A DNA stretch of 64,000 nucleotides from Pecten maximus. Taxonomy: Eukaryota. Below the pieces are notes generated by a model. That model had not been told where the DNA came from. It made no database searches and saw nothing but the letters and a program-made list of their open reading frames with translations. Both the position numbers and the translations under genes were made by a program. Below, piece after piece: positions 43,125-59,800 of this stretch (positions within the stretch are counted from its first letter, which is position 1; each line of letters begins with the position of its first letter). Where the stretch lies: assembly GCF_902652985.1 (NCBI RefSeq), contig NC_047022.1, positions 9,114,001-9,178,000 on the forward strand, in the 5' to 3' direction.

Positions 43125-46100
43125 ACTAATGCCCCTTTACATACCTACCACTACACCTAATGCTCCTTTACATACCTACCACTGCACATAATGCTCATTT
43201 ACATACCTACCACTAAGCCTAATGCTCCTTTACATACCTACCACTACACGTAATACTCCTTTACATACCTACCACTACACCTAATGCTCCTTTACATAAC
43301 TACCACTAAACCTAATACTCCTTTACATACCTACCACTACACCTAATACTCCTTTACATAGCTACCACTAAACCTAATACTCCTTTACATACTTACCACT
43401 ACACCTAATACTCCTTTCCATAACTACCACTAAACCTAATACTCCTTTACATACCTACCACTACACCTAATACTCCTTTACATACCTACCACTACACCTA
43501 ATACTCCTTTACATGCAATGGGGGCAGCAGGTACAATTCTTACGCCCTACCTGCAAGGCAAGAGGCGACTAAATTTGGGATCTTATCTTTTCACTTCTTC
43601 CTTAACAACTTTCTTCTTCCTAGCGTCTCCCTTGACACTGCCTCACTTTTGGCCTTTAGTTGAGCGTTCGCCCCTGTGAGGAAGGCTTTGGGTTCTGTTC
43701 CCTAGCCGAGACATACCAGAGTCTTTAAAAATGGTAGTTGCTACTCCTGCTTAGCGCTCAGCATATTTGGAGTGGGACGACTGGTTTGCCCGTTGTCAGT
43801 ATAATGTGACCGGGTGGGGTGTGCTGCTGGGTGTCTTCGGCAGTATGCTTCAGTGAGGTAGCACTTTAAATCGGCAAAAACTCCGGCCTATCACAAGGAG
43901 ACTTTACACGAACATACCGCAGCCTCCCAAAACACACATACGCACTCACCACACACACGCATGTCGCACGCACGGGAGGCCGTCCTTAAATGACCTTAGA
44001 TGTTAATAGGACGCTAAACTAAATAAACCAAACCAAACCAAACCAAACTCCTTTACATACCTACCACTACACCTAATGCTCCTTTCCATACCTACCACTA
44101 AACCTAATACTCCTTTCCATACTTACCACTACACCTAATACTCCTTTACATACTTACCACTACACCTAATACTCCCTTCCATACCTACCACTAAACCTAA
44201 TGCTCCTTTCCATACCTACCACTACACCTAATACTCCTTTACATATCTACCACTACACCTAATGCTCCTTTACATACCTACCACTACACCTAATCCTCCT
44301 TTACCTACCTACCACTACACCTAATGCTCCTTTACATACCTACCACTACACCTAATACTCCTTTGCATACCTACCACTACACCTAATACTCCTTTACATA
44401 CCTACCACAAAACCTAATCCTCCTTTACATACCTACCACTACACCTAATGCTCCTTTGCATACCTACCACTACACCTAATACTCCTTTACATACCTACCA
44501 CTACACCTAATACTCCTTTACATACCTACCACTGCACCTAATGCTCCTTTCCATACCTACCACTACACCTAATGCTCCTTTACATATCTACCACTACACC
44601 TACCACTACACCTAATACTCCTTTACATATCTACCACTACACCTAATGCTCCTTTCCATACCTACCACTACACCTAATACTCCTTTACATATCTACCACT
44701 ACACATAATGCTCCTTTACATACCTACCACTACACCTAATACTCATTTACATACCTATCACTACACCTAATACTCCTTTACATACCTACCACTACACCTA
44801 ATGCTCCTTTCCATACCTACCACTACACCTAATACTCCTTTACATATCTACCACTACACATTATGTTCCTTTACATACCTACCACTACACATAATACTCC
44901 TTTACATACCTACCACTACACCTAATGCTCCTTTACATATCTACCACTACACCTACCACTACACCTAATACTCCTTTACATATCTACCACTACACCTAAT
45001 GCTCCTTTACATACCTACCACTACAATTAATACTCCTTTACATACCTACCACTACACCTAATACTCCTTTACATACCTACCACTACACCTAATACTCCTT
45101 TACATGCCTACCACTACACCTAATCCTCCTTTACCTACCTACCACTACACCTAATGCTCCTTTACATACCTACAACTACACCTAATGCTCCTTTACATAC
45201 CTACCACTACACCTAATACTCCTTTACATACCTACCACTACACCTAATGCTCCTTTACATACCTACCACTACACCTAATACTCCTTTACATACCTACCAC
45301 TACACCTAATACTCCTTTACATACCTACCAATACACCTAATACTCCTTTACATACCTACCACTACACCTAATGCTCCTTTACATACCTACCACTACACCT
45401 AATACTCCTTTACATACCTACCACTACACCTAATACTCCTTTACATACCTACCACTACACCTAATCCTCCTTTACATACCTACCACTACACCTAATGTTT
45501 CTTTCCATACTTACCACTACACCTAATGCTCCTTTACATACCTACCACTACACCTAATACTCCTTTCCATACTTACCACTACACCTAATGCTCCTTTACA
45601 TACCTACCACTACACCTAATGCTCCTTTACATACCTACCACTACACCTAATGCTCCTTTACATACCTACCACTACACCTAATGCTCCTTTCCATACCTAC
45701 CACTACACCTAATGCTCCTTTACATACCTACCACTACACCTAATACTCCTTTACATACTTACCACTAAACCTAATACTCCTTTACATACCTACCACTACA
45801 ATTAATGCTCCTTTACATACCTACCACTACACCTAATGCTCCTTTACATACCTACCACTACACCTAATGCTCCTTTACATACCTACCACTAAACCTAATA
45901 CTCCTTTACATACCTACCACTACACCTAATGCTCCTTTACATACCTACCACTACACCTAATGCTTCTTTCCATACTTACCACTACACCTAATACTCCTTT
46001 ACATACCTACCACTGCAACTAATGCTCCTTTACATACCTACCACTACACCTAATACTCCTTTACATACCTACCACTACACCTAATGCTTCTTTCCATACT

Positions 46101-46455
46101 TACCACTACACCTAATACTCCTTTACATACCTACCACTAAACCTAATGCTCCTTTCCATACCTACCACTACACCTAATACTCCTTTACATACCTACCACT
46201 ACACCTAATGCTTCTTTCCATACCTACCACTACAACTAATGCTCCTTTACATACCTACCACTACACCTAATACTCCTTTTACCTATCACTGCATCTAATG
46301 CTCCTTTACATACCTACCACTACACCTAATACTCCTTTTACCTACCACTGCATCTAATGCTCCTTTACATACCTACCACTACACCTAATACTCCTTTTAC
46401 CTACCACTGCATCTAATGCTCCCTTACATACCTACCACTACACATAATGCTCCTT
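43125..46455. repeat. 31-bp satellite (cctaatactcctttacatacctaccactaca), interrupted by a SINE
   Basis: About 90 tandem units with strong C/A versus G/T strand asymmetry. Confidence 0.97.
43515..44046 (+). mobile_element. Long Meta-type SINE insertion with 12-bp target-site duplication
   Basis: TSD actcctttacat at 43503-43514 and 44047-44058; core aaaaatggtagttgctactcctgcttagcgctcagcat; (AAACC)n tail. Confidence 0.85.
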
Positions 46456-49386: not shown

Positions 49387-50875
49387 TCAGATACTAGAAA
49401 ATGTCAGCATTTTCCTTGGGATCAGATTCCAGATTCTTGCTTTCCAGAGTATGGCCATAAAGTAGTCACCTGTCTTGAAATAGTACTGTCTTTTGGTTGT
49501 CTGGATAATTAGAACCCAGGAATCTGAAATAAAAGACAATTTTAAGTGTTTCGACAGACTAAGTTTTAAACATGGAACAACTTATATAAACCAATTCTTG
49601 CTTTTTCGATTTTTTCGTTTTACTGTAAATTCGTTCGCTTTGACATGAAAAACCTATCGAAACTGAATCGAAAAATATATCCTTGTTTCGAGATATAAGA
49701 CGTCAAACTTTATTTCTATCTCTGCCTGACATTACCAAATAATTACAGAAGCCATTCGTGGCAATCATCAGATTAAGAGAGGTGACATCAGAGTCGCTTA
49801 CTAATGTGGACGAGACATATGTGTGGTACTAAATAATTGGCTGTTTTGGGAGGCTGTGGGTTTTTTGCTTGTCTTCATGTCATGATAGCGCGCAACTGTT
49901 TCAAATGTTACAACTCTACCTCACTGAGGCAACTCGCCGAAGACACCCCGCAAAGCAAACTAGTCGTCATACTCCCCAGAATGCTGAGCATTTAGCAAGA
50001 GTGCCGTCTTACAAACACTGGTAGGTGACTCTAACAAGGAACGTGATTGCACCCAAACACTCACCTAAATGCTTAAGTAAGAGCAGTATCAACGGGAAAT
50101 AAGCAAACAGAAACTTGTAGGGAAAGATGAGAAAAGAAAACTGACCTCAATTTAGTCGCCTTTAAAAACCGACGATGTGAGAGCAGATGCGATGCTAATG
50201 TTGTAAGTCAAACATAGGAAATCAATTAAAAGCACACTGGCTTTTAAGGTATCAATATTTGATTTTTATGACAATTTGCAAGTGATCTACTGTTCTGTGT
50301 CAGATGCCAAGATTTTCATTTCCGTTCTTGTTGATATAGCTCTAGCAATGAAGACATTTCATATCAAATCAAGACTAATGTCAAATATTATGCAACAATA
50401 TAACCCGATGAGTCATGTGGCGGATGAACGATTCCTAAATCCCATTGGTCGATGCTACATGCGAATGGGACCCAAACCAAATAAAGAAAACATGAAAGGC
50501 CACATGTGTAAACTTGGATATCGGTGCCGAATGGGATCATTTCCTACTGTCCCAATGCAGCGCGATACAGCAAGACGGTCCTGCATTTCCAGTTTTTTTC
50601 AAACATAAAAGACGCCGGGGAAAGGAAACCCCAGGTCCGTTAGCGTCGCCGAAGACAGGCAAACGTCTACATAATGTCATTGCACATCCCAATAAACTTA
50701 CCTTGTACTAAATCCATATCGACACGAAGGACACGAGAAATGGGACATTTTCTCTTCGGTGACGTTCTGTTTCTGTCAATATCTCTCCATTTTAACTGCG
50801 GTACATTGTTCTCAATGCAGACTCTCAACTCAACCAGGTGGTCCCAACCGTTTGAGGTCTCCTTCACAAATCTTC
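49387..50875 (-). CDS. Last two PKS exons, encoding a PH-like domain
   Basis: 50875-50702 + 49523-49387 splice in phase 1 to give GRFVKETSNGWDHLVELRV...LKW...PKRKCPISRVLRV...DSWVLIIQTTKRQYYFKTGDYFMAILWKARIWNLI...*. Confidence 0.75.
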
Positions 50876-53800
50876 CTATAAAAAGTGAATAGGTAACATG
50901 ATAAGAATAGACTATAATAGTTGAAAATAACAAATTTCAATAGTGGTAAAGTTGAACATATAAAACAGGATGACGTTTCATGGCAAACATGTAGGAAGTG
51001 TAAAGAGAAATATGATATTAAGAAGGAAACTATTGTGAAATAACAGAAAATATCTCAAGTTCAGGTGCATCAGACGGACAATACTTGGGGTACAGCAAAC
51101 AAAACTATCTTCCAAAAAGTAGAATGTCTTTTTGTTGGCATGGTAGTTAAAAGTAAACCTGAAATTGTAGGGATCTTGTAGAGACTATGTTTTGTTTCCT
51201 TATTTTCATTTAACACCCATTTCAACTAAACATACATATAAACATATTTCGCATTCATGCTTTTTAGTAATTTTTGGCGTTTTCTGTAATGGTCCGAAGC
51301 ACATTAGCTCCAATATTCTTTTTATATATGCAAACTTGAACGAATTGTTTATCTGTTAATATGAAATATCAGTTGTTTTCAGGAAAAAAAAAAAAACATG
51401 ACCCGATACCCTGCATGCATAGTATGTATTTACCTGATAACAGTTGTGGATCCACTCCGTCCACAGCCTCGGCTGGAGAGCACCGTAAGGGAATGTTGTC
51501 AAGACTTATATCAGAATTCAAGGCATTTACACAGGCCAGTAACAGAAGATCTTCAAGCATATTGTTTGCTGTAGACAAGCTTACGATGGTTGGGTCGTAA
51601 CTTAATACGAAGTCCATCGATCCTGTCTGGGTATCCGTGACGATATTTAAAGCTGTTTCAATGTGGTTCAGAAAGCCAGTGTTATATCCGGAGTGTTTCA
51701 TAGTATGGTTTGGGTACTTCTCGTGTTTGAATGTTTGATTTGATACATATCTGACATTAAAGAAATGGCGAAAAGCGTTGGCCGCATCAGGATTGTTCTG
51801 TTTGATGAGTAGAAAAGGGTACAGACTGTGCGTGCTTGCAAGAGTCATTTGACTTGCACAGATTCTGATACAATCTCCAAGTGTAGCGGGTGTATCGCTA
51901 AACGCTGTTACGATCGGGATATAGTTGGTACCAAGAAATACCATGCTGGTAAACTCTGGTAAGTGTCGTCGCATGTCCACTGTCAGTACAACGGGAGTGA
52001 CAGGTTGACGCGTCATCTTGTGGAGAAGAATTTGGTAGAGACAGAAGACTAGGGTAGGTCCTGTTACACCTTTGTCGTTCTGATTAATTTTGTCTACTAA
52101 CTCTCTTGGAAGGCGAATCGATATCTGTTCCGTCTTTCCAGACAGAGGAACCAATGACTCAGACTTGACGAGAGACGGCACAGTATGAATTCTATCAAGC
52201 TCCCCTTTCCAGAACTCCTGGAGATAAAACCTCTCACCATCAAGACGTTCTTCCATCAGATATGTTACATCAGGGACATCTGCAGTTTCTAAGTTGGTAC
52301 CCGTTCCCATCAGGTATGTCTGTAAGTCCGCCTGGAACTGCGGTATCAGCGTGAAGAAGCTTTGTAAGTCAAATGTGATGTGGCTCATGACAAACCTGAT
52401 GTGATGTTTCCTACCTGTATTGCCATAAATCAACCGCAACGGCGGGTCTGTGGTGATGTCGAATGTGCAGTACTTGACCATATCCTCGTCTGTCCAACCC
52501 TTTTTAATCACAACGGAATCAACCACTCGGAAATCAACTTGGGCATCCTCTGGATCCAAAACATGCTTTTTGATACCGAATCTAAATCGTTCCTTAGTAG
52601 GATGGTACAAAGTCCTAAGTTCTTTATTTCTGATTGTTGCCCATCGCAGGACAGTACGCCAAAGTTCGATATTCGATAGACCGGTTCCCAGTTTGAAATC
52701 TATACTGAACCAAAGACTAGAGTCAACGGGAGAGTCTTCATGCATGTCGATGTAGAATTTTTGCATCCATGTTGGTGATTCACGTATGTCCTCCTTTATT
52801 TCCGAATTGTCATTAGTATTATTATCGATGATGTTTGAATGTACAAAGTCGATAATCATGCCGATAGTATAGTTAGGAGACAGGATGTAAGCAACCGGAA
52901 GTCGACAGCCTGTAGCCTCATGTACAATCTGGATCAATTCCACAGATTTTTGGGACTCCATACCTAGTTCAAGAAGGTTTTGATTTTCTTCCAAGTAATT
53001 TTCATCTAAAGATAACACCGTAGAGAAACACTTTAATAATAAATTAACAAGTGTCTTCCTCTGTTGCTCATGTGATGTCGATTTGAATTCAGCAATGTTA
53101 AGAACAGTGTTAATTTCGCGCCTTCGAATTGCCGACTGATTGAAAATGGTGCTCTCTTCTTGCTTGTCAACGATAGAGGTCCGTATAATAGAAGGGTTTT
53201 TACCGACTACGCTCCAGTCAAACAAACCAAATATGGATTGACATGGATTTCGAGTCAGGCAATCCATAAGGCATTCTTTGATTTTGTCTGTTTCAAGCAG
53301 ATAATGCCCCTGTGCTTCTAGGTTGTTTCTGATGTTCTCATCACTCGCCATTCCCACCGCCAATGCGCCCCAGTTGATCGTCTGTCCAGGTAGGTTGTTG
53401 GCTCTTCTGTAAAAGGCAAAGGCATCCATGAATGAGTTCGCAGCTCCATAATTAGTCTGTCCAGCATTTCCAAAGACAGATGTTGTTGAGGAATGCATGA
53501 CAAAGAAATCCAATTTTAATTCTTTAGAGATAAGGTGTAGGTTCCAGGATCCAAGAACTTTTGGCGCTAAGACTTCTTTGAACTTTTCAATTGTCATGGT
53601 TTCAATACGAGCATCTCTTAGCACTCCAGCTCCCTGGAATATACCTTTGACTGGATGATTTGGAAATTTTAACTTGATTGCAGAAAATACATTTTCCACA
53701 TCAACAAAATTCGCAACATTGCAAGTCATTGGCACAATTTTGTACTTGTGTATATCCATTGCATTTTGGAGTTGATCTTTCATCTGTGGATTGACACCTC

Positions 53801-56800
53801 TCCTTGATAGTGGTACTACAATGCCAGCACCTCTGTGGCCCAGCCATTTGACGATGTCCCATCCAAGGCCTGTCAACCCACCAACAACAACATACGTTGC
53901 ATTACTATGGAAAAGTGTGTCACCTTTCGCTTTTATGGCCACATCCGTGACATCCCCGCATCTTTTGTCAGGGAGATTGATGGTTTTAAGCTGTAATGAC
54001 TTTACTGCATTTGTCATAAGGTCATGTCGTTTTTGTCGTCTTTGCAGCCATCTCGTTACTTTTGGAAATGTTTTAGCAACATTATTTTCCTCAAACACTT
54101 TCGTCTTTGCAATGGTTTGTACTTTTATTCGTTTTGTACTCAGTTGAATTTTCTTATTTGATAGACAGAGTATCACATCATCAAAGCCTACAATGGTATT
54201 CCCCGGCTGTAAAATGCAGTCTATTTTCTGTTGAGGATAAGTTTGCAACAATACAAACACGCAACCCTTTTGTTGATCGTCCTTAATTATGGAGGCGAAT
54301 GATGTAACTCGAACTTTGCTTTGCCTAACAGTCTCAAGCATGTCACAGAGAAGGAAAACTTCCCAATCTTCAGCCGGGTCTGCTTCAGTCACAACACAAA
54401 CTGTAGATCTGCGCCTAATTATCTCAGTGATGGCCCAAATCAACATGGACTTTATGATTAGACCGGGTTTGTACATTGGCAAGCTTGCTATGTCGCATAC
54501 ACATTGTTTTGGAACGCAGATTCTATTGGAAACTCTCGATGGGTAACATGCCACAACACGGCTGGATCTTTGCGCGCTAAGGATGGTGCCTTGAAACTCT
54601 AACGCAATGACTGGATATCCCCCGCTGTATTCTGACCAAAGTGATTTGCTGATACTCGTTTCCAACTCTGTTAGTCGAAAATCTGTTGGCGAGTGAACAC
54701 ATATTTCCTCAACCAAAAGTATGACCTCATTATTTCGAAGTTCACAGTTTCGATCAACAGGTGTCAGAAATGGGCTCTCAATGCTGTCCCAAGTAATAGA
54801 CTGTAGCTCAAGGTCGCTGTTTGTGTCAGTGGATATGACTCTTTTTTCGCTCTGTAATCCATTCTGTGTCCTTTGCTGTAGAAAGTTACTATGCAACTGT
54901 CCATCAACGATGATAAATTCCGTAAATGAAGGAGGGTTGGACGTAAGAACTTCAATAGTTTTGTGCAATATCGCTAATTGCGAGGCAATTGTAGGCTGCA
55001 CATCTATCAGAATCATTCGACATTTCGTTCCTTCCTGTCTTAAAGATCTAGCAAAACCCCATAATTCAGCACCCAATACATTTTTATCAGTAACTGGTTC
55101 AGGAACGTTTGCTTGTGTGTTCTCAGTAATTACTATCACTGGCTTTTCCAAGTCTTTCACCCTTTGAATGGTGTTAAGGAAGGCGTTACAATTTTTGCAA
55201 ACACGACTAAACAGATCGTTTCTACATTCTCTTTGATTGAACGAATCTGGGACAAATATCAAAACATCCGTCTGTTGTAAATCACTGGAGGTTCCCAATA
55301 CAGCGTTGTCTTCCAAATCAAGCAGACTAAATGATTTTCCTATTGGGTATAAACTTCTCAACATTTCGCATATGTTGCTATCGTCGAAGCAGATTGTAAC
55401 GCTTTCCTGCTCTTTATCGTTCACGTTGTTGCTAATCGCAGGGACATCTTCAACCGCCCAGGTAATCTGATAAGCAAGAGCGTTTACTGTTAAGCCATCG
55501 TTCATAATCTTGTGTTCGATTTCCTTAACTTCAGCTAGTACCAGACCGTCAGGTCTAGTTAGAATGATGTTGGTGATAATCCTGTCATAGACTTTCTGTA
55601 TTACTTGTGTATAACATATCATTTGCTTCTCAAGTCTTCGTAATAAGGATACGCTGCCGAGGCGAATCGGATAAATCTTGTTTAAAGATTTATTGTGAAC
55701 GGAAAAGAAATCCAGAGCACTGGAGTGGAGCATGGCATCTAGAACAGCAGGATGGAAGGCAGTCTGGTTAAGTTGTCTTGTTACATCCTCAGTAAGTTGG
55801 ATATATCCAGTATATTCATCTTTGCCGAATGTAACCGATTCCAAAACCTGGACTGGAGCGCCGTATTTGTAGCCATGTTCAGCTAGTTTGCTGTAAATTG
55901 TATCTCGTTCCATTTGTTTCCCAGTAGGTATGCACAATTCATTAATAGGAACGATGTGGTTTTGTGCACGGTTTTTGTTTGTGATAGATCCTTTGACTAC
56001 GGTCGTCGCATTTTTTAAAATAGAGAAAGATACCCTGATAACACCATTACCCTTTTCTGTAATATCAGATATCAAATCGAGACGAAAGGGCTTTCCTTTG
56101 AACAAGGGAATTGATTTGATAATTTCGTACTCTACATGCATGCTTTCAGCTGATATGCCCATGGTACTCATTCCAAGCTCATATGCCACCTCCGCGTAAA
56201 CAGCGCCTGGAATGATGATGGCGTTGTCTATAGCATGATTATATACAAACGGCGTTGCAGTTGGACTAAAGTTGACGTCAAATTTCCCTGCTGCCTCTTG
56301 TTTTGTGATCATAAGGCATTGGTATGAAGAATCATCAACCAATCCTTGTTTCCTGAGGAAGCGGTAGTCTGATTCAATCATCAAGCGTTTGCCATCAAAC
56401 TGGTAGCTGGGAAGGTCTGTCGGGTTGTCTTTATCTACAATATTTTCCCATTTCGGATTCAGTCCAAGCGCATACAAATGTCCAAGAGTATTTCGCACTT
56501 GTGAAGATCCAGTCTCAAATTTCATGGAAGGAAACGCTGCGACATCTTCATCGTTAAATATATCCCGTAAATGCGCTTTCAAAACAGGCTGGGGACCAAT
56601 TTCTAGGAATATGGTAGACTTCTCATCTGCTGATACCTGAAGTGCCTGATGGAACAAAACTGGTCTAGCGACGTTTTGTTGCCAATACTCCGGAGTGCCG
56701 AAGTCGATTGCAATCTTTCCCGTTACAGTGGAGAATATAGGTATGTTCGGTGTATCGGTTTCTATCCCTTCCAAAGCTTCTTTAATGCGCTTGGCTGAGT

Positions 56801-59800
56801 CTTCTACCTTGTAACTGTGGTAAGCGCAATTTGTTTTCAAATCACTGAAATACGGTATTTCATTACTTTTTTCAGCATCTTCTCTTATGATTGTTTTTGC
56901 TTCTTTCACTTTCAGATCGTCACCAGTTAGTGTGCATGCGACGGGACTGCTGTATACTGCGATCCCGACCTGACCAACCTTGTCACATATCTTGGCTACG
57001 TTTGTGGTATCAGCATTCCTAACCACAAGCATTCTCCCTCCCAATACCTCTGCCAATAATTTTGATCTGTAGTAGATAACTTTAACTGCATCATGCAGGG
57101 ACAGTGCCCCACTACAGTAGGCAGCGGCAACCTCTCCAACAGACTGACCGACGGTCGCATCAGGGCATATTCCCCAATGCTTCCAGAGGTTTGACAGTCC
57201 TACTTGGCAGGCAAAAATGCCAATATGACCAATGAATGGGTCTACCATATCTGCACCTTTTCGTATTTTGTCTGTTATTGACCAGCCTGTAAGTGGCATC
57301 AAATGTATATCTATACTTTGCAGAGTGTCAGCGAAAACATGAAAGTCACTTAAAAGTTCCTTGCCCATATGTGTCCATGCAGTTCCAACACCACAGAACA
57401 CGTACACTAATCTGTAGTTCCTGCCTGGTGTAATATTGCTGCTTGATATCGATTCAATTTCATAAGAGCAACTTTTTGTGAGGTCAGCAATTGTTGACAC
57501 GATGAACATCTTTCGATATCTATGGTGATCCCGTCTACACGAAGCGGTGTAGGCTAATTGCTTCAAACTGTATGGTTCGTTTGTCAATCTTGTTAGCAAG
57601 TTCCTCATTGTTTTTTCTAGGCAGATCTGAGATTTAGCTGAAACAGGAACACATATCATCTTCTCAGCATTTTCCGATCTAGACCTAGATTTGTCTGGTA
57701 TCTCAATCCACTGCCTTACAAAAGCGTGGCTGTTTGTGCCACCAAATCCAAAACAGTTGATGCAAGCAGCTCTGGAGCCATCTTGTAGAGCAGGCCATCG
57801 GTACACGGATGCTGGCACATCGAGGGCATAACCCACAAAGTCTATCTTGGGATTCCTTGGAAGAGAATGGAGGGAGGGTACAATTTTCTGATGCTTCATC
57901 ATAAGAAGAGTTTTGATAAGACTTGCAACCCCAGCTCCGGATTCGAGATGTCCAATGTTAGTTTTAACTGATCCAATAAATCGTTGCCCATACAGTATCG
58001 GATGATCTTTGAAGAAGCGACCAAGACTGTTGACTTCAACAGGGTCACCAATGGGTGTACCAGTTCCTATAAAAATGGGAAAAGAGAGGCACCTAATATT
58101 TCCACCGATGAATTTATATAAAATTACCGTTATAAGGATTTAATATATTAATTGACAGTATTATTAAATTCATAATATATCATAATACATGTATTTATAT
58201 AGCAATCACCGCAATATCTTATAAAATACAATTATTAAATGCAAGATACTGTAGACGGAGACATTTAGGTGACGGCAAATTATGACGGTTTCTCATGATG
58301 GTTTTATTTTGGTCTATATTTACCGTTTTCAAAAAACCCGTGTCAAAGTTTGGCTTGTTTCGATATTCATACTACATTACCGATGTCAAATCAAATACTC
58401 TTCATAGTTGAAAGGATCATAAGGAGTTTTACCAAAATTGTGAATTTCCTGACCTTGGGGTCTCACTTTTGCTCCTGGGAAGGGGGTAACCTTAATTTTA
58501 GTTTACATAGGGAAATCACATTTTTAACTATGATTTGTTTGATTTTTATTGGAATTAACTCTAACTTTGTTAACGTCATCGGCATGGGATGACAGCTTGA
58601 TGGTATGCACTTTTGGCTGACCTCCTTGGTTGATGGGCGGGGCCAAAAAGTGTCAACTAAAATATTTCAAAACTCGTTAAGGCCCTCTTGTTTTCAGGTG
58701 CAGATTTTTTCCAATTCAAGAACTATTCCCCGACACAGCCTAGATGTATTCTCGTCAAAAGTCGTCACCCGACCACATTCCTGTTATTCAACGGAATACC
58801 CATTAAGTTTAATACGTATCAATTGCCTATAGATATTGAAATAAGAACAACCCCAATCACGTGATTTAATATGAACCACCTGGTGATGAAATTCAGAAAT
58901 CTGAAATACGTATATTTAGACTCTAATAATTTCGATGAAACTGGGTATAGAGAAGATTTAAAAAAAAAATCTAACCTTTGCGTGTTTGGACCCAACTATT
59001 AGTCCTTTCGATAGTCAGTAAGGGTCAATATGTTCGTACCTTATATACCATATAAGCAAATTCCAATTGATTTCAAAGGAAATAAAAAAGGATGTTTCAA
59101 AATCTGATTGCGCTATATTAACTTCAGATTTTTTTTTACTTCGTCCTCATTGTGGGATTGGGCGATTGGTTCGCCCGTTGTCAGTATAATGTGACTGGGT
59201 GAGGTGTCTTCAGCAGTATACTTTAACTGAAGTAGCACTAAGATTTTGGCGCCAGTTCCACGTTATCACAAGTAGACAATGACGACCATACCACAGCCCC
59301 CCCCCCCCCCCCCCCCCCCCCCAAAAAAAACAACCCCACACATGATGTTGTGAGTGCGTCTCCTTGAGAAGGTCCGGAACTTTTTGTCGATTTATAGTTC
59401 TACCTCACTGAAGCATACTATGACGTAAGTTTTTTTTTCCTAGCAATTTTTGGTTTTTAGCAGAACGTTTTATAATTTCAGTCAATTTGACCTCTTTTTG
59501 CCTCTTCTATCACGCCCGTGGAATGGGGACCATATAATACAAACATTGTGGTTAGCCTTTGGTTATGGAAAGTTTCTGCGGGACACAATTTTATTAGTAG
59601 TTTGTTGAAAGAAGTCGAAAATGTAACTTGTTTACGGACAGACAATGGTGTTGACCATGGATTAAGGATTATAATAATTATATTAATTAGAAATTTCATA
59701 TTAACATTAATACATTTAAGATAGAAATCTAAATTTCTGATTTTTTAAAAGTGCAATCAAATTTTAAATGATAAATTAATATTTGCCTACCGTGTGCTTC

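What the first reader, a model, noticed from the sequence alone, without database searches (positions are those of the whole stretch)
49387..50875. Hidden PH-like C-terminal domain on the PKS
The ORF track ends the PKS at 51369, but a donor at 51434 splices in frame to two small exons. The ~105-aa product follows the PH pattern: G-x-x-x-K and W on strands 1-2, L-x-W, 'PK..I..V..V', 'LIIQTTKRQYYFK', and a terminal helix with Trp (MAILWKARIWNL). It is rich in basic residues. Inference: it binds phosphoinositides, membranes or a partner protein and localises synthesis, for example to a secretory or pigment organelle.
Basis: partly seen in the sequence, partly recalled or inferred. Interest (0 to 1): 0.8.

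Follow-up and report, generated by a model that had tools for sequence, protein, structure and literature searches.

The report
PH-like tail on scallop PKS
Two small conserved exons give this scallop polyketide synthase a C-terminal pleckstrin-homology-like domain, also found on related enzymes in other bivalves and a brachiopod; it probably docks the enzyme to a membrane or a partner, but that role is untested.

Summary
The genome is Pecten maximus. On the minus strand the PKS exon (AT-DH-KR-ACP-Condensation) has a GT donor after base 51434. Two phase-1 exons follow in frame: 50875-50702 and 49523-49387.

- **Conservation in this genome:** six paralogous PKS genes carry an exon-2 homologue just downstream on the same strand, and five also carry exon 3. 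Splice sites and phases are identical, and dN/dS is below 1.
- **Database models:** RefSeq models of scallop paralogues, a unionid mussel protein and a Lingula (brachiopod) protein end in the same tail.
- **Fold:** AlphaFold2 models of a paralogue tail and the Lingula tail (pLDDT 87.5 and 88.1) show seven strands plus a C-terminal helix. They match solved PH domains at Z 12.8-13.9. Pfam PH hits stay below threshold. A profile search of 1.84 billion proteins found no relatives outside this PKS family.
- **Caveat 1:** the RefSeq model of this gene uses exon 2, then ends in a different last exon inside a dispersed repeat. That ending would truncate the domain. No RNA data could decide between the two.
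- **Caveat 2:** the canonical phosphoinositide motif is absent, so lipid binding is unsupported.

The scan's only other notes are on this same window.

The parts
51434..57902 (-). Large PKS exon: KS C-terminal extension, AT, DH, KR, ACP and Condensation domain. Coding ends at the donor after base 51434.
   Evidence: ORF; Pfam KR 1e-52, Acyl_transf_1 2e-43, Condensation 5e-15, PS-DH, PP-binding; 99-100% identical to RefSeq XP_033746877.1.
50876..51433 (-). Intron 1 (558 nt), GT at 51433-51432 and AG at 50877-50876, phase 1.
   Evidence: Sequence; the same junction is used in RefSeq model P0001.
50702..50875 (-). Exon 2: first part of the PH-like domain (strands beta1-beta5, including the variable basic beta3-beta4 loop).
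   Evidence: Translation; six paralogous copies; conserved splice sites; dN/dS 0.26-0.58; gapless alignment to residues 2-58 of the modelled tail.
49524..50701 (-). Intron 2 (1178 nt), GT at 50701-50700 and AG at 49525-49524, phase 1. It is longer than in the closest paralogues (about 410-620 nt).
   Evidence: paralogue spacing.
49842..50163 (-). Copy of a dispersed repeat inside intron 2. Two matched segments (50163-50056 and 49952-49842) lie in the same order and at similar spacing as in other copies.
   Evidence: At least 55 matches at about 72-78% identity across the genome.
49960..50030 (-). Alternative terminal coding exon used by the RefSeq model of this gene (ESPTSVCK...EYDD, then a stop). 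It lies between the two repeat segments. It would cut the PH-like domain after beta5.
   Evidence: C-terminus of P0001 read against the sequence; acceptor ccttgttag| at 50032-50031.
49387..49523 (-). Exon 3: strands beta6-beta7 and the C-terminal helix with the hallmark Trp, then stop TGA at 49389-49387.
   Evidence: Translation; five paralogous copies at 55-74% identity; conserved acceptor; dN/dS 0.11-0.33 with no rate acceleration on the window branch.

Best explanation
The two exons are genuine, ancestral coding exons of this Pecten maximus type I PKS gene (KS-AT-DH-KR-ACP-C, no thioesterase). Together they encode a roughly 100-residue C-terminal domain with the pleckstrin-homology superfold: seven strands and a C-terminal helix with a conserved Trp. 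The module belongs to the whole gene family. It occurs on all seven scallop paralogues in this genome (one lacks a detectable exon 3), on PKS-C proteins of other Pectinidae, on a unionid mussel PKS-C and on a Lingula (brachiopod) PKS-C. It therefore predates the mollusc-brachiopod split or is at least very old in lophotrochozoans. Shown: gene structure, conservation, purifying selection and fold (on homologues). Inferred: the domain acts as a docking or targeting module next to the chain-releasing condensation domain. It would hold the megasynthase at a membrane surface through its basic face, or bind a partner or acceptor protein. It probably does not act as a classical phosphoinositide reader, because the scallop copies lack that pocket. 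In this gene copy a dispersed repeat in intron 2 offers an alternative last exon, which RefSeq chose. The mRNA may therefore encode either the full domain or a truncated one.
For: Splice sites and frames. Paralogous exon pairs downstream of paralogous PKS exons. Identical splice positions and phases in all copies. dN/dS 0.11-0.33 (exon 3) and 0.26-0.58 (exon 2) in all 16 pairs, with the window branch not accelerated against the C12 outgroup. RefSeq and other models with the complete tail (P0002, P0003, P0004, P0005, P0008, P0009). Tail also in Sinanodonta P0017 and Lingula P0016/P0122 (local hmmsearch E about 3e-8). AlphaFold2: pLDDT 87.5 and pTM 0.77 (scallop paralogue tail); pLDDT 88.1 and pTM 0.78 (Lingula tail); both show 7 strands plus a C-terminal helix. 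Foldseek top hits are almost all PH domains, TM 0.65-0.75. VIA Z 12.8 (rmsd 2.1 A over 89 aa) and Z 13.9 (2.0 A over 95 aa), both against the ARAP3 PH domain. Weak but consistent sequence signals: Pfam PH E 1.7e-4 and 1.4e-3, PH_3, Mcp5_PH; SBF1 and GRK2 PH domains at the top of a PDB profile search; PH clusters in the ESM Atlas at 0.88. The window's exons align without gaps at 56% and 70% identity to the modelled tail.
Against: The window's own spliced product was never folded, because the joined step was left out by rule. No RNA evidence exists: no listed run held the stretch and no contig was laid. The only RefSeq isoform of this gene ends in a different last exon. The window copy has unique residues at three tail positions that are invariant in the six database tails (P to L, R to W, S to P). 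Pfam PH never reaches its gathering score (best 19.6 against 25.1 bits). The functional part is inference only, and the canonical lipid-binding motif is absent.
Confidence: 0.8

Rival explanations
1. In this particular paralogue the PH-like domain is no longer made whole. The repeat insertion in intron 2 supplies the terminal exon actually used, as in RefSeq XP_033746877.1. The protein then ends after beta5, and exon 3 is an unused relic.
For: The only RefSeq isoform ends in ESPTSVCK...EYDD, encoded at 50030..49960. That exon sits inside a dispersed repeat. An AATAAA lies 246 nt after its stop, whereas the nearest canonical signal after exon 3 is about 1300 nt away. The window copy has three unique substitutions at otherwise invariant tail positions.
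Against: Exon 3 is intact and has a good acceptor. It shows dN/dS of 0.19-0.33 against its paralogues, and its branch is not accelerated (pN to the outgroup 0.232, against 0.245 and 0.193 for the paralogues). Hexamer signals are expected by chance about every 400 nt in this AT-rich DNA. Gnomon models can be ab initio at 3' ends. A half PH sandwich would probably not fold.
Confidence: 0.3
2. The tail is a classical phosphoinositide-binding PH domain that recruits the PKS to a PIP-marked organelle.
For: Basic composition, pI 8.8-10.5. The best structural matches include PIP-binding PH domains: ARAP3, DAPP1, TAPP1, Akt. The Lingula tail has a longer, basic beta1-beta2 region, K..PKGIRHKR.
Against: No K-Xn-(K/R)-X-R motif occurs in any scallop tail or in the window's exon 2. 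In the scallop model beta1 and beta2 are joined by a turn of about 2 residues, and E/Q-H-P sits where the basic residues should be. From established knowledge, most PH domains do not bind phosphoinositides specifically. A shared fold does not show function.
Confidence: 0.12
3. The two ORFs are chance open frames or belong to a different downstream gene, not to the PKS.
For: Each exon alone has no Pfam hit. There is no RNA evidence.
Against: Seven-fold synteny with PKS paralogues, conserved splice phases and dN/dS below 1. Independent gene models in four scallop genera, a unionid and a brachiopod place the tail at the PKS C-terminus.
Confidence: 0.02

Closest known systems
Pleckstrin-homology (PH) domains, Pfam PF00169 / PH-like clan (for example the ARAP3, DAPP1, GRK2 and SBF1 PH domains)
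   Same: A seven-stranded sandwich capped by a C-terminal helix with a conserved Trp. Z 12.8-13.9 and rmsd about 2 A over about 90% of the domain. The beta7-plus-helix sequence pattern aligns with the SBF1 and GRK2 PH domains.
   Different: Sequence is below Pfam's gathering score. A profile search found no relatives outside this PKS family among 1.84 billion representatives. The scallop copies have a very short beta1-beta2 turn and no phosphoinositide signature. The domain is attached to a polyketide megasynthase, a context I found in no paper.
Mollusc 'canonical animal PKS' clade with C-terminal condensation domains (Lin et al. 2024, PMC10764717)
   Same: KS-AT-DH-KR-ACP-C architecture, no thioesterase, found in bivalves. 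That paper states that the mollusc PKS clade has forms with and without C domains.
   Different: The paper does not mention a PH or pleckstrin domain (0 occurrences). Here a further folded domain follows the C domain.
RefSeq model XP_033746877.1 (LOC117332102, Pecten maximus)
   Same: The same gene, the same donor at 51434 and the same exon 2.
   Different: It ends in a repeat-derived exon (50030..49960) instead of the conserved exon 3 (49523..49387), so it lacks beta6, beta7 and the C-terminal helix.

Membership tests
PH-like superfold | Seven-stranded antiparallel beta-sandwich closed by a C-terminal alpha-helix | tested here: met
   AlphaFold2 on the tails of paralogue P0002 and of Lingula-type P0016 gives E-E-E-E-E-E-E-H, with pLDDT 87.5 and 88.1. 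The window's exons align to these without gaps. The window's own joined product was not folded.
PH-like superfold | Significant structural similarity to solved PH domains over the whole domain | tested here: met
   VIA Z 12.8 and 13.9, rmsd 2.0-2.1 A, 89-95 residues aligned. Foldseek top 50 hits are almost all PH domains, TM 0.65-0.75.
PH-like superfold | Conserved Trp in the C-terminal helix | tested here: met
   The window has ILWKARI. Trp is present in 5 of 6 scallop tails, in Lingula and in Sinanodonta.
Pfam PH (PF00169) | Score at or above the curated gathering cut-off (25.1 bits) | tested here: not met
   The window's exons alone give no hit. The best tail hits are E 1.7e-4 and 19.6 bits, both below the cut-off.
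Phosphoinositide-binding PH domains | Basic K-Xn-(K/R)-X-R signature on beta1 / loop / beta2 | tested here: not met
   A regex scan found none in the six scallop tails or in the window's exon 2. The beta1-beta2 turn is about 2 residues in the model.
Phosphoinositide-binding PH domains | Measured lipid binding | not testable with these tools
   Needs recombinant protein and lipid assays.
Animal/mollusc type I PKS with terminal condensation domain | KS-AT-DH-KR-ACP-C order and no thioesterase | tested here: met
   Pfam on the window exon. The KS families PF00109 and PF02801 are present and PF00975 is absent in the full RefSeq model P0001. KS exons are visible at 61650-57900.

The most novel reading that the evidence does not exclude
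A sequence-orphan PH-like domain has been a fixed part of lophotrochozoan PKS-condensation megasynthases since before molluscs and brachiopods diverged. It positions the chain-releasing C domain at a membrane or on an acceptor protein. The polyketide would then be off-loaded directly onto a membrane-bound or protein-bound nucleophile. That would be a built-in targeting device not described for any PKS.
Probability: 0.15. Interest if true: 0.75.

Novelty: new variant of a known kind. Interest (0 to 1): 0.55.

Why it matters
Type I PKSs are normally described as soluble assembly lines that end in a thioesterase, reductase or condensation domain. A conserved PH-type module after the releasing domain suggests that where, or onto what, the product is released is built into the enzyme. 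The products of animal PKS-C enzymes are unknown. A targeting or docking domain gives a handle for finding partners, the subcellular site and the acceptor substrate. On the practical side, the PH-like identity is invisible to Pfam at curated thresholds. The RefSeq model of this gene also probably ends in a repeat-derived exon, so annotation of this family needs care.

Tried and rejected
- **Pfam on each window exon alone:** no hits even at E 10.
- **RNA support:** no listed run held the stretch. Contigs of four same-species runs laid nothing. This is not evidence of silence.
- **The look-up of encoding contigs:** I wanted DNA downstream of the Haliotis PKS-C (P0020) and of the ENA relative (P0015).
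- **Word search with the Lingula tail region:** it returned only itself.
- **Big HMMER profile search with the scallop tails:** it returned only family members. The origin of the domain could not be traced.
- **Poly(A) hexamers as a guide to the true last exon:** uninformative at this base composition.
- **Exon 3 of the C12:13.86 Mb paralogue:** not found within 10 kb.
- **Chance ORFs or a separate gene:** rejected on synteny, splice-phase conservation and dN/dS.
- **Joined window exons:** Homologous database tails stood in for them.

Full report
**Observation.** The gene lies on the minus strand.
- The 2177-aa ORF at 57902..51369 carries the KS C-terminal extension, AT, DH, KR, ACP and a Condensation domain (Pfam). 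KS exons lie upstream, up to about 61650.
- Twenty-two codons before the ORF's stop there is a consensus donor, TTATCAG|gtaaat. The last exonic base is 51434 and the phase is 1.
- Exon 2 is 50875..50702, with acceptor tttttatag| and donor |gtaagt, phase 1 at both ends.
- Exon 3 is 49523..49387, with acceptor ttatttcag| and a TGA stop. Both exons continue the frame.

**More than chance.** Six-frame searches of the window's own genome with each exon, kept apart, found six further exon-2 copies. They are 37-59% identical by that search, with E down to 2e-13. Five further exon-3 copies were found at 55-74% identity. The pairs always keep the same order and strand.
- I fetched 10 kb upstream of each copy and ran tblastn with the window's PKS exon. 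Every copy sits directly downstream, on the same strand, of a paralogous PKS exon at 60-73% identity.
- The acceptor of exon 2, the donor of exon 2 and the acceptor of exon 3 fall at the same codon position and phase in all copies.
- Nei-Gojobori dN/dS is 0.26-0.58 for exon 2 and 0.11-0.33 for exon 3, over all 16 pairs. Non-synonymous distance to the C12 outgroup copy is no larger for the window copy than for its sisters, so the window's exon 3 is not decaying detectably.

**Identity of the gene and existing models.** The word search returned Pecten maximus XP_033746877.1 (LOC117332102, 2603 aa, 99-100% identical) and relatives from Pecten, Mizuhopecten, Ylistrum and Argopecten.
It then ends in ESPTSVCK...EYDD.
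- I located that ending at 50030..49960, inside intron 2.
- A DNA search shows this exon lies between two segments (50163-50056 and 49952-49842) of a dispersed repeat. The repeat has at least 55 copies at about 75% identity, and the segments keep the same order and spacing elsewhere.
- RefSeq's last exon is therefore probably repeat-derived. It would end the protein after strand beta5.
- Only one isoform is on record in this collection.

**Fold.** I used tails of database proteins instead.
- An alignment of six scallop tails (A1) gave an AlphaFold2 model of the P0002 tail with mean pLDDT 87.5 and pTM 0.77. It has seven strands followed by a 20-residue C-terminal helix.
- Foldseek's top hits are almost all PH domains (ASK1, GRK2, BTK, DAPP1, PLC-delta, Tfb1), with TM 0.65-0.75 on the query.
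- VIA-align gives Z 12.8 against the ARAP3 PH domain, rmsd 2.1 A over 89 of 99 residues. Hundreds of PH, PTB and FERM-F3 chains score above Z 8.
- A second model, of the Lingula-type tail, has pLDDT 88.1 and pTM 0.78, the same topology, and Z 13.9 with rmsd 2.0 A over 95 of 107 residues.
- The window's exon 2 and exon 3, entered as separate rows, align without gaps to residues 2-58 and 60 onwards of the modelled tail, at 56% and 70% identity. Exon 2 therefore encodes beta1-beta5, and exon 3 encodes beta6, beta7 and the helix with the hallmark Trp.
- Sequence-level signals are weak but all point the same way:
  - Pfam PH at E 1.7e-4 and PH_3 at 0.0034 in scallop tails.
  - Pfam PH at E 0.0014 over positions 4-101 of 105 in Sinanodonta, and PH plus Mcp5_PH in Lingula.
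  - SBF1 and GRK2 PH domains at the top of a PDB profile search, E 0.018 and 0.062.
  - PH clusters in the ESM Atlas at 0.88, which counts as a lead only.
- None of these reaches Pfam's curated cut-off.

**Distribution.** A HMMER profile search of the six tails against 1.84 billion representatives found three proteins at E of 0.001 or better, all members of this PKS family. In sequence terms the domain is an orphan.
- Among more distant PKS relatives fetched by the word search, a local hmmsearch found the tail at the C-terminus of P0017. This is Sinanodonta woodiana KAL3888379.1, which has a C domain.
- It also found the tail in P0016, whose 90% cluster includes Lingula anatina XP_023929979.1 with an identical tail. 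Both score E about 3e-8 in the small database.
- A Mytilus PKS without a C domain (P0019) gives a marginal hit (E 0.003), so I leave it open.
- The Haliotis PKS-C model (P0020) and the fish PKSs show no tail in their models.
- Lin et al. 2024 (PMC10764717) describe mollusc PKSs with and without C domains but do not mention a PH domain. Full-text searches for polyketide synthase together with pleckstrin found no such architecture.

**How it probably works.** The following is shown: the PKS family ends in a conserved, selectively constrained PH-fold domain placed right after the chain-releasing C domain. The rest is inferred.
- The scallop tails are basic, with pI 8.8-10.5 over the first 98 residues.
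- None of the scallop tails has the K-Xn-(K/R)-X-R signature of phosphoinositide-binding PH domains.
- In the model the beta1-beta2 connection is a two-residue turn, with the invariant sequence G-W-x-H-P where the basic residues should be.
- I therefore rate classical PIP reading as unlikely (about 0.12).
- I favour a docking role, either non-specific electrostatic association with an anionic membrane or binding of a partner or acceptor protein. This would place product release.
- The Lingula tail has a longer, more basic beta1-beta2 region and may differ.

**The window's own copy.** Whether this gene's mRNA ends in exon 3 or in the repeat-derived exon is unresolved.
- For exon 3: it is intact, its acceptor is conserved, and its constraint is normal.
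- For the RefSeq ending: it is the only model on record, an AATAAA lies 246 nt after its stop, and none lies within 1.3 kb after exon 3. Such hexamers are expected by chance in this AT-rich DNA.
- No RNA run held the stretch, and nothing was laid.
- I put about 0.3 on the truncation reading for this copy.

**Verdict.** The domain is not truly hidden, since paralogue models contain it. It is, however, unlabelled and, as far as I could search, undescribed. Its function is open. I class it as a new variant of a known kind, with interest 0.55.

Noticed in passing
window 49842-50163 (minus strand, intron 2): A dispersed repeat with at least 55 genomic copies at about 75% identity. The terminal coding exon of RefSeq XP_033746877.1 (50030..49960) lies inside it, so this may be exonisation of a repeat or a gene-model artefact.
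   Followed up: partly
G000:C12:13848600-13860202 (L003, L021): The paralogue at C12:13.86 Mb has a good exon-2 homologue with a conserved donor, but no exon-3 homologue within 10 kb downstream.
   Followed up: partly
G000:C12:31.88-32.07 Mb (L004, L006, L007, L012-L014, L017-L019): Three PKS-C-PH paralogues lie within about 190 kb on contig C12 as a local cluster. Two of them have an intron 2 of about 5 kb.
   Followed up: no
window 50765-50750 region of exon 2, and paralogues (translations): The variable, low-confidence beta3-beta4 loop carries S-P-K-R / S-P-K-K / S-P-R in several copies. This resembles a proline-directed kinase site and could be a regulatory phosphosite.
   Followed up: no
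window 44047-46455: A C-rich minisatellite with a 31/62-nt unit and about 78 copies. It causes the GC skew of -0.91.
   Followed up: partly
window 19618-21950: A G-rich minisatellite with a 66-nt unit, 35.5 copies and 96% matches. It causes the GC skew of +0.60.
   Followed up: partly
window about 61270-61215 and about 59335-59296 (minus strand, KS introns): A (CTT)n microsatellite and a poly-G run of about 35 nt lie inside introns between the KS exons.
   Followed up: no
P0019 (Mytilus galloprovincialis VDI80301.1), residues about 2130-2229: This PKS has no Condensation domain but ends in a stretch with marginal similarity to the tail (local E 0.003, no Pfam hit). The PH-like tail may occur without the C domain.
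   Followed up: partly
window 52400-52380 region (C domain): The condensation-domain motif reads SHITFD rather than HHxxxDG.
   Followed up: no
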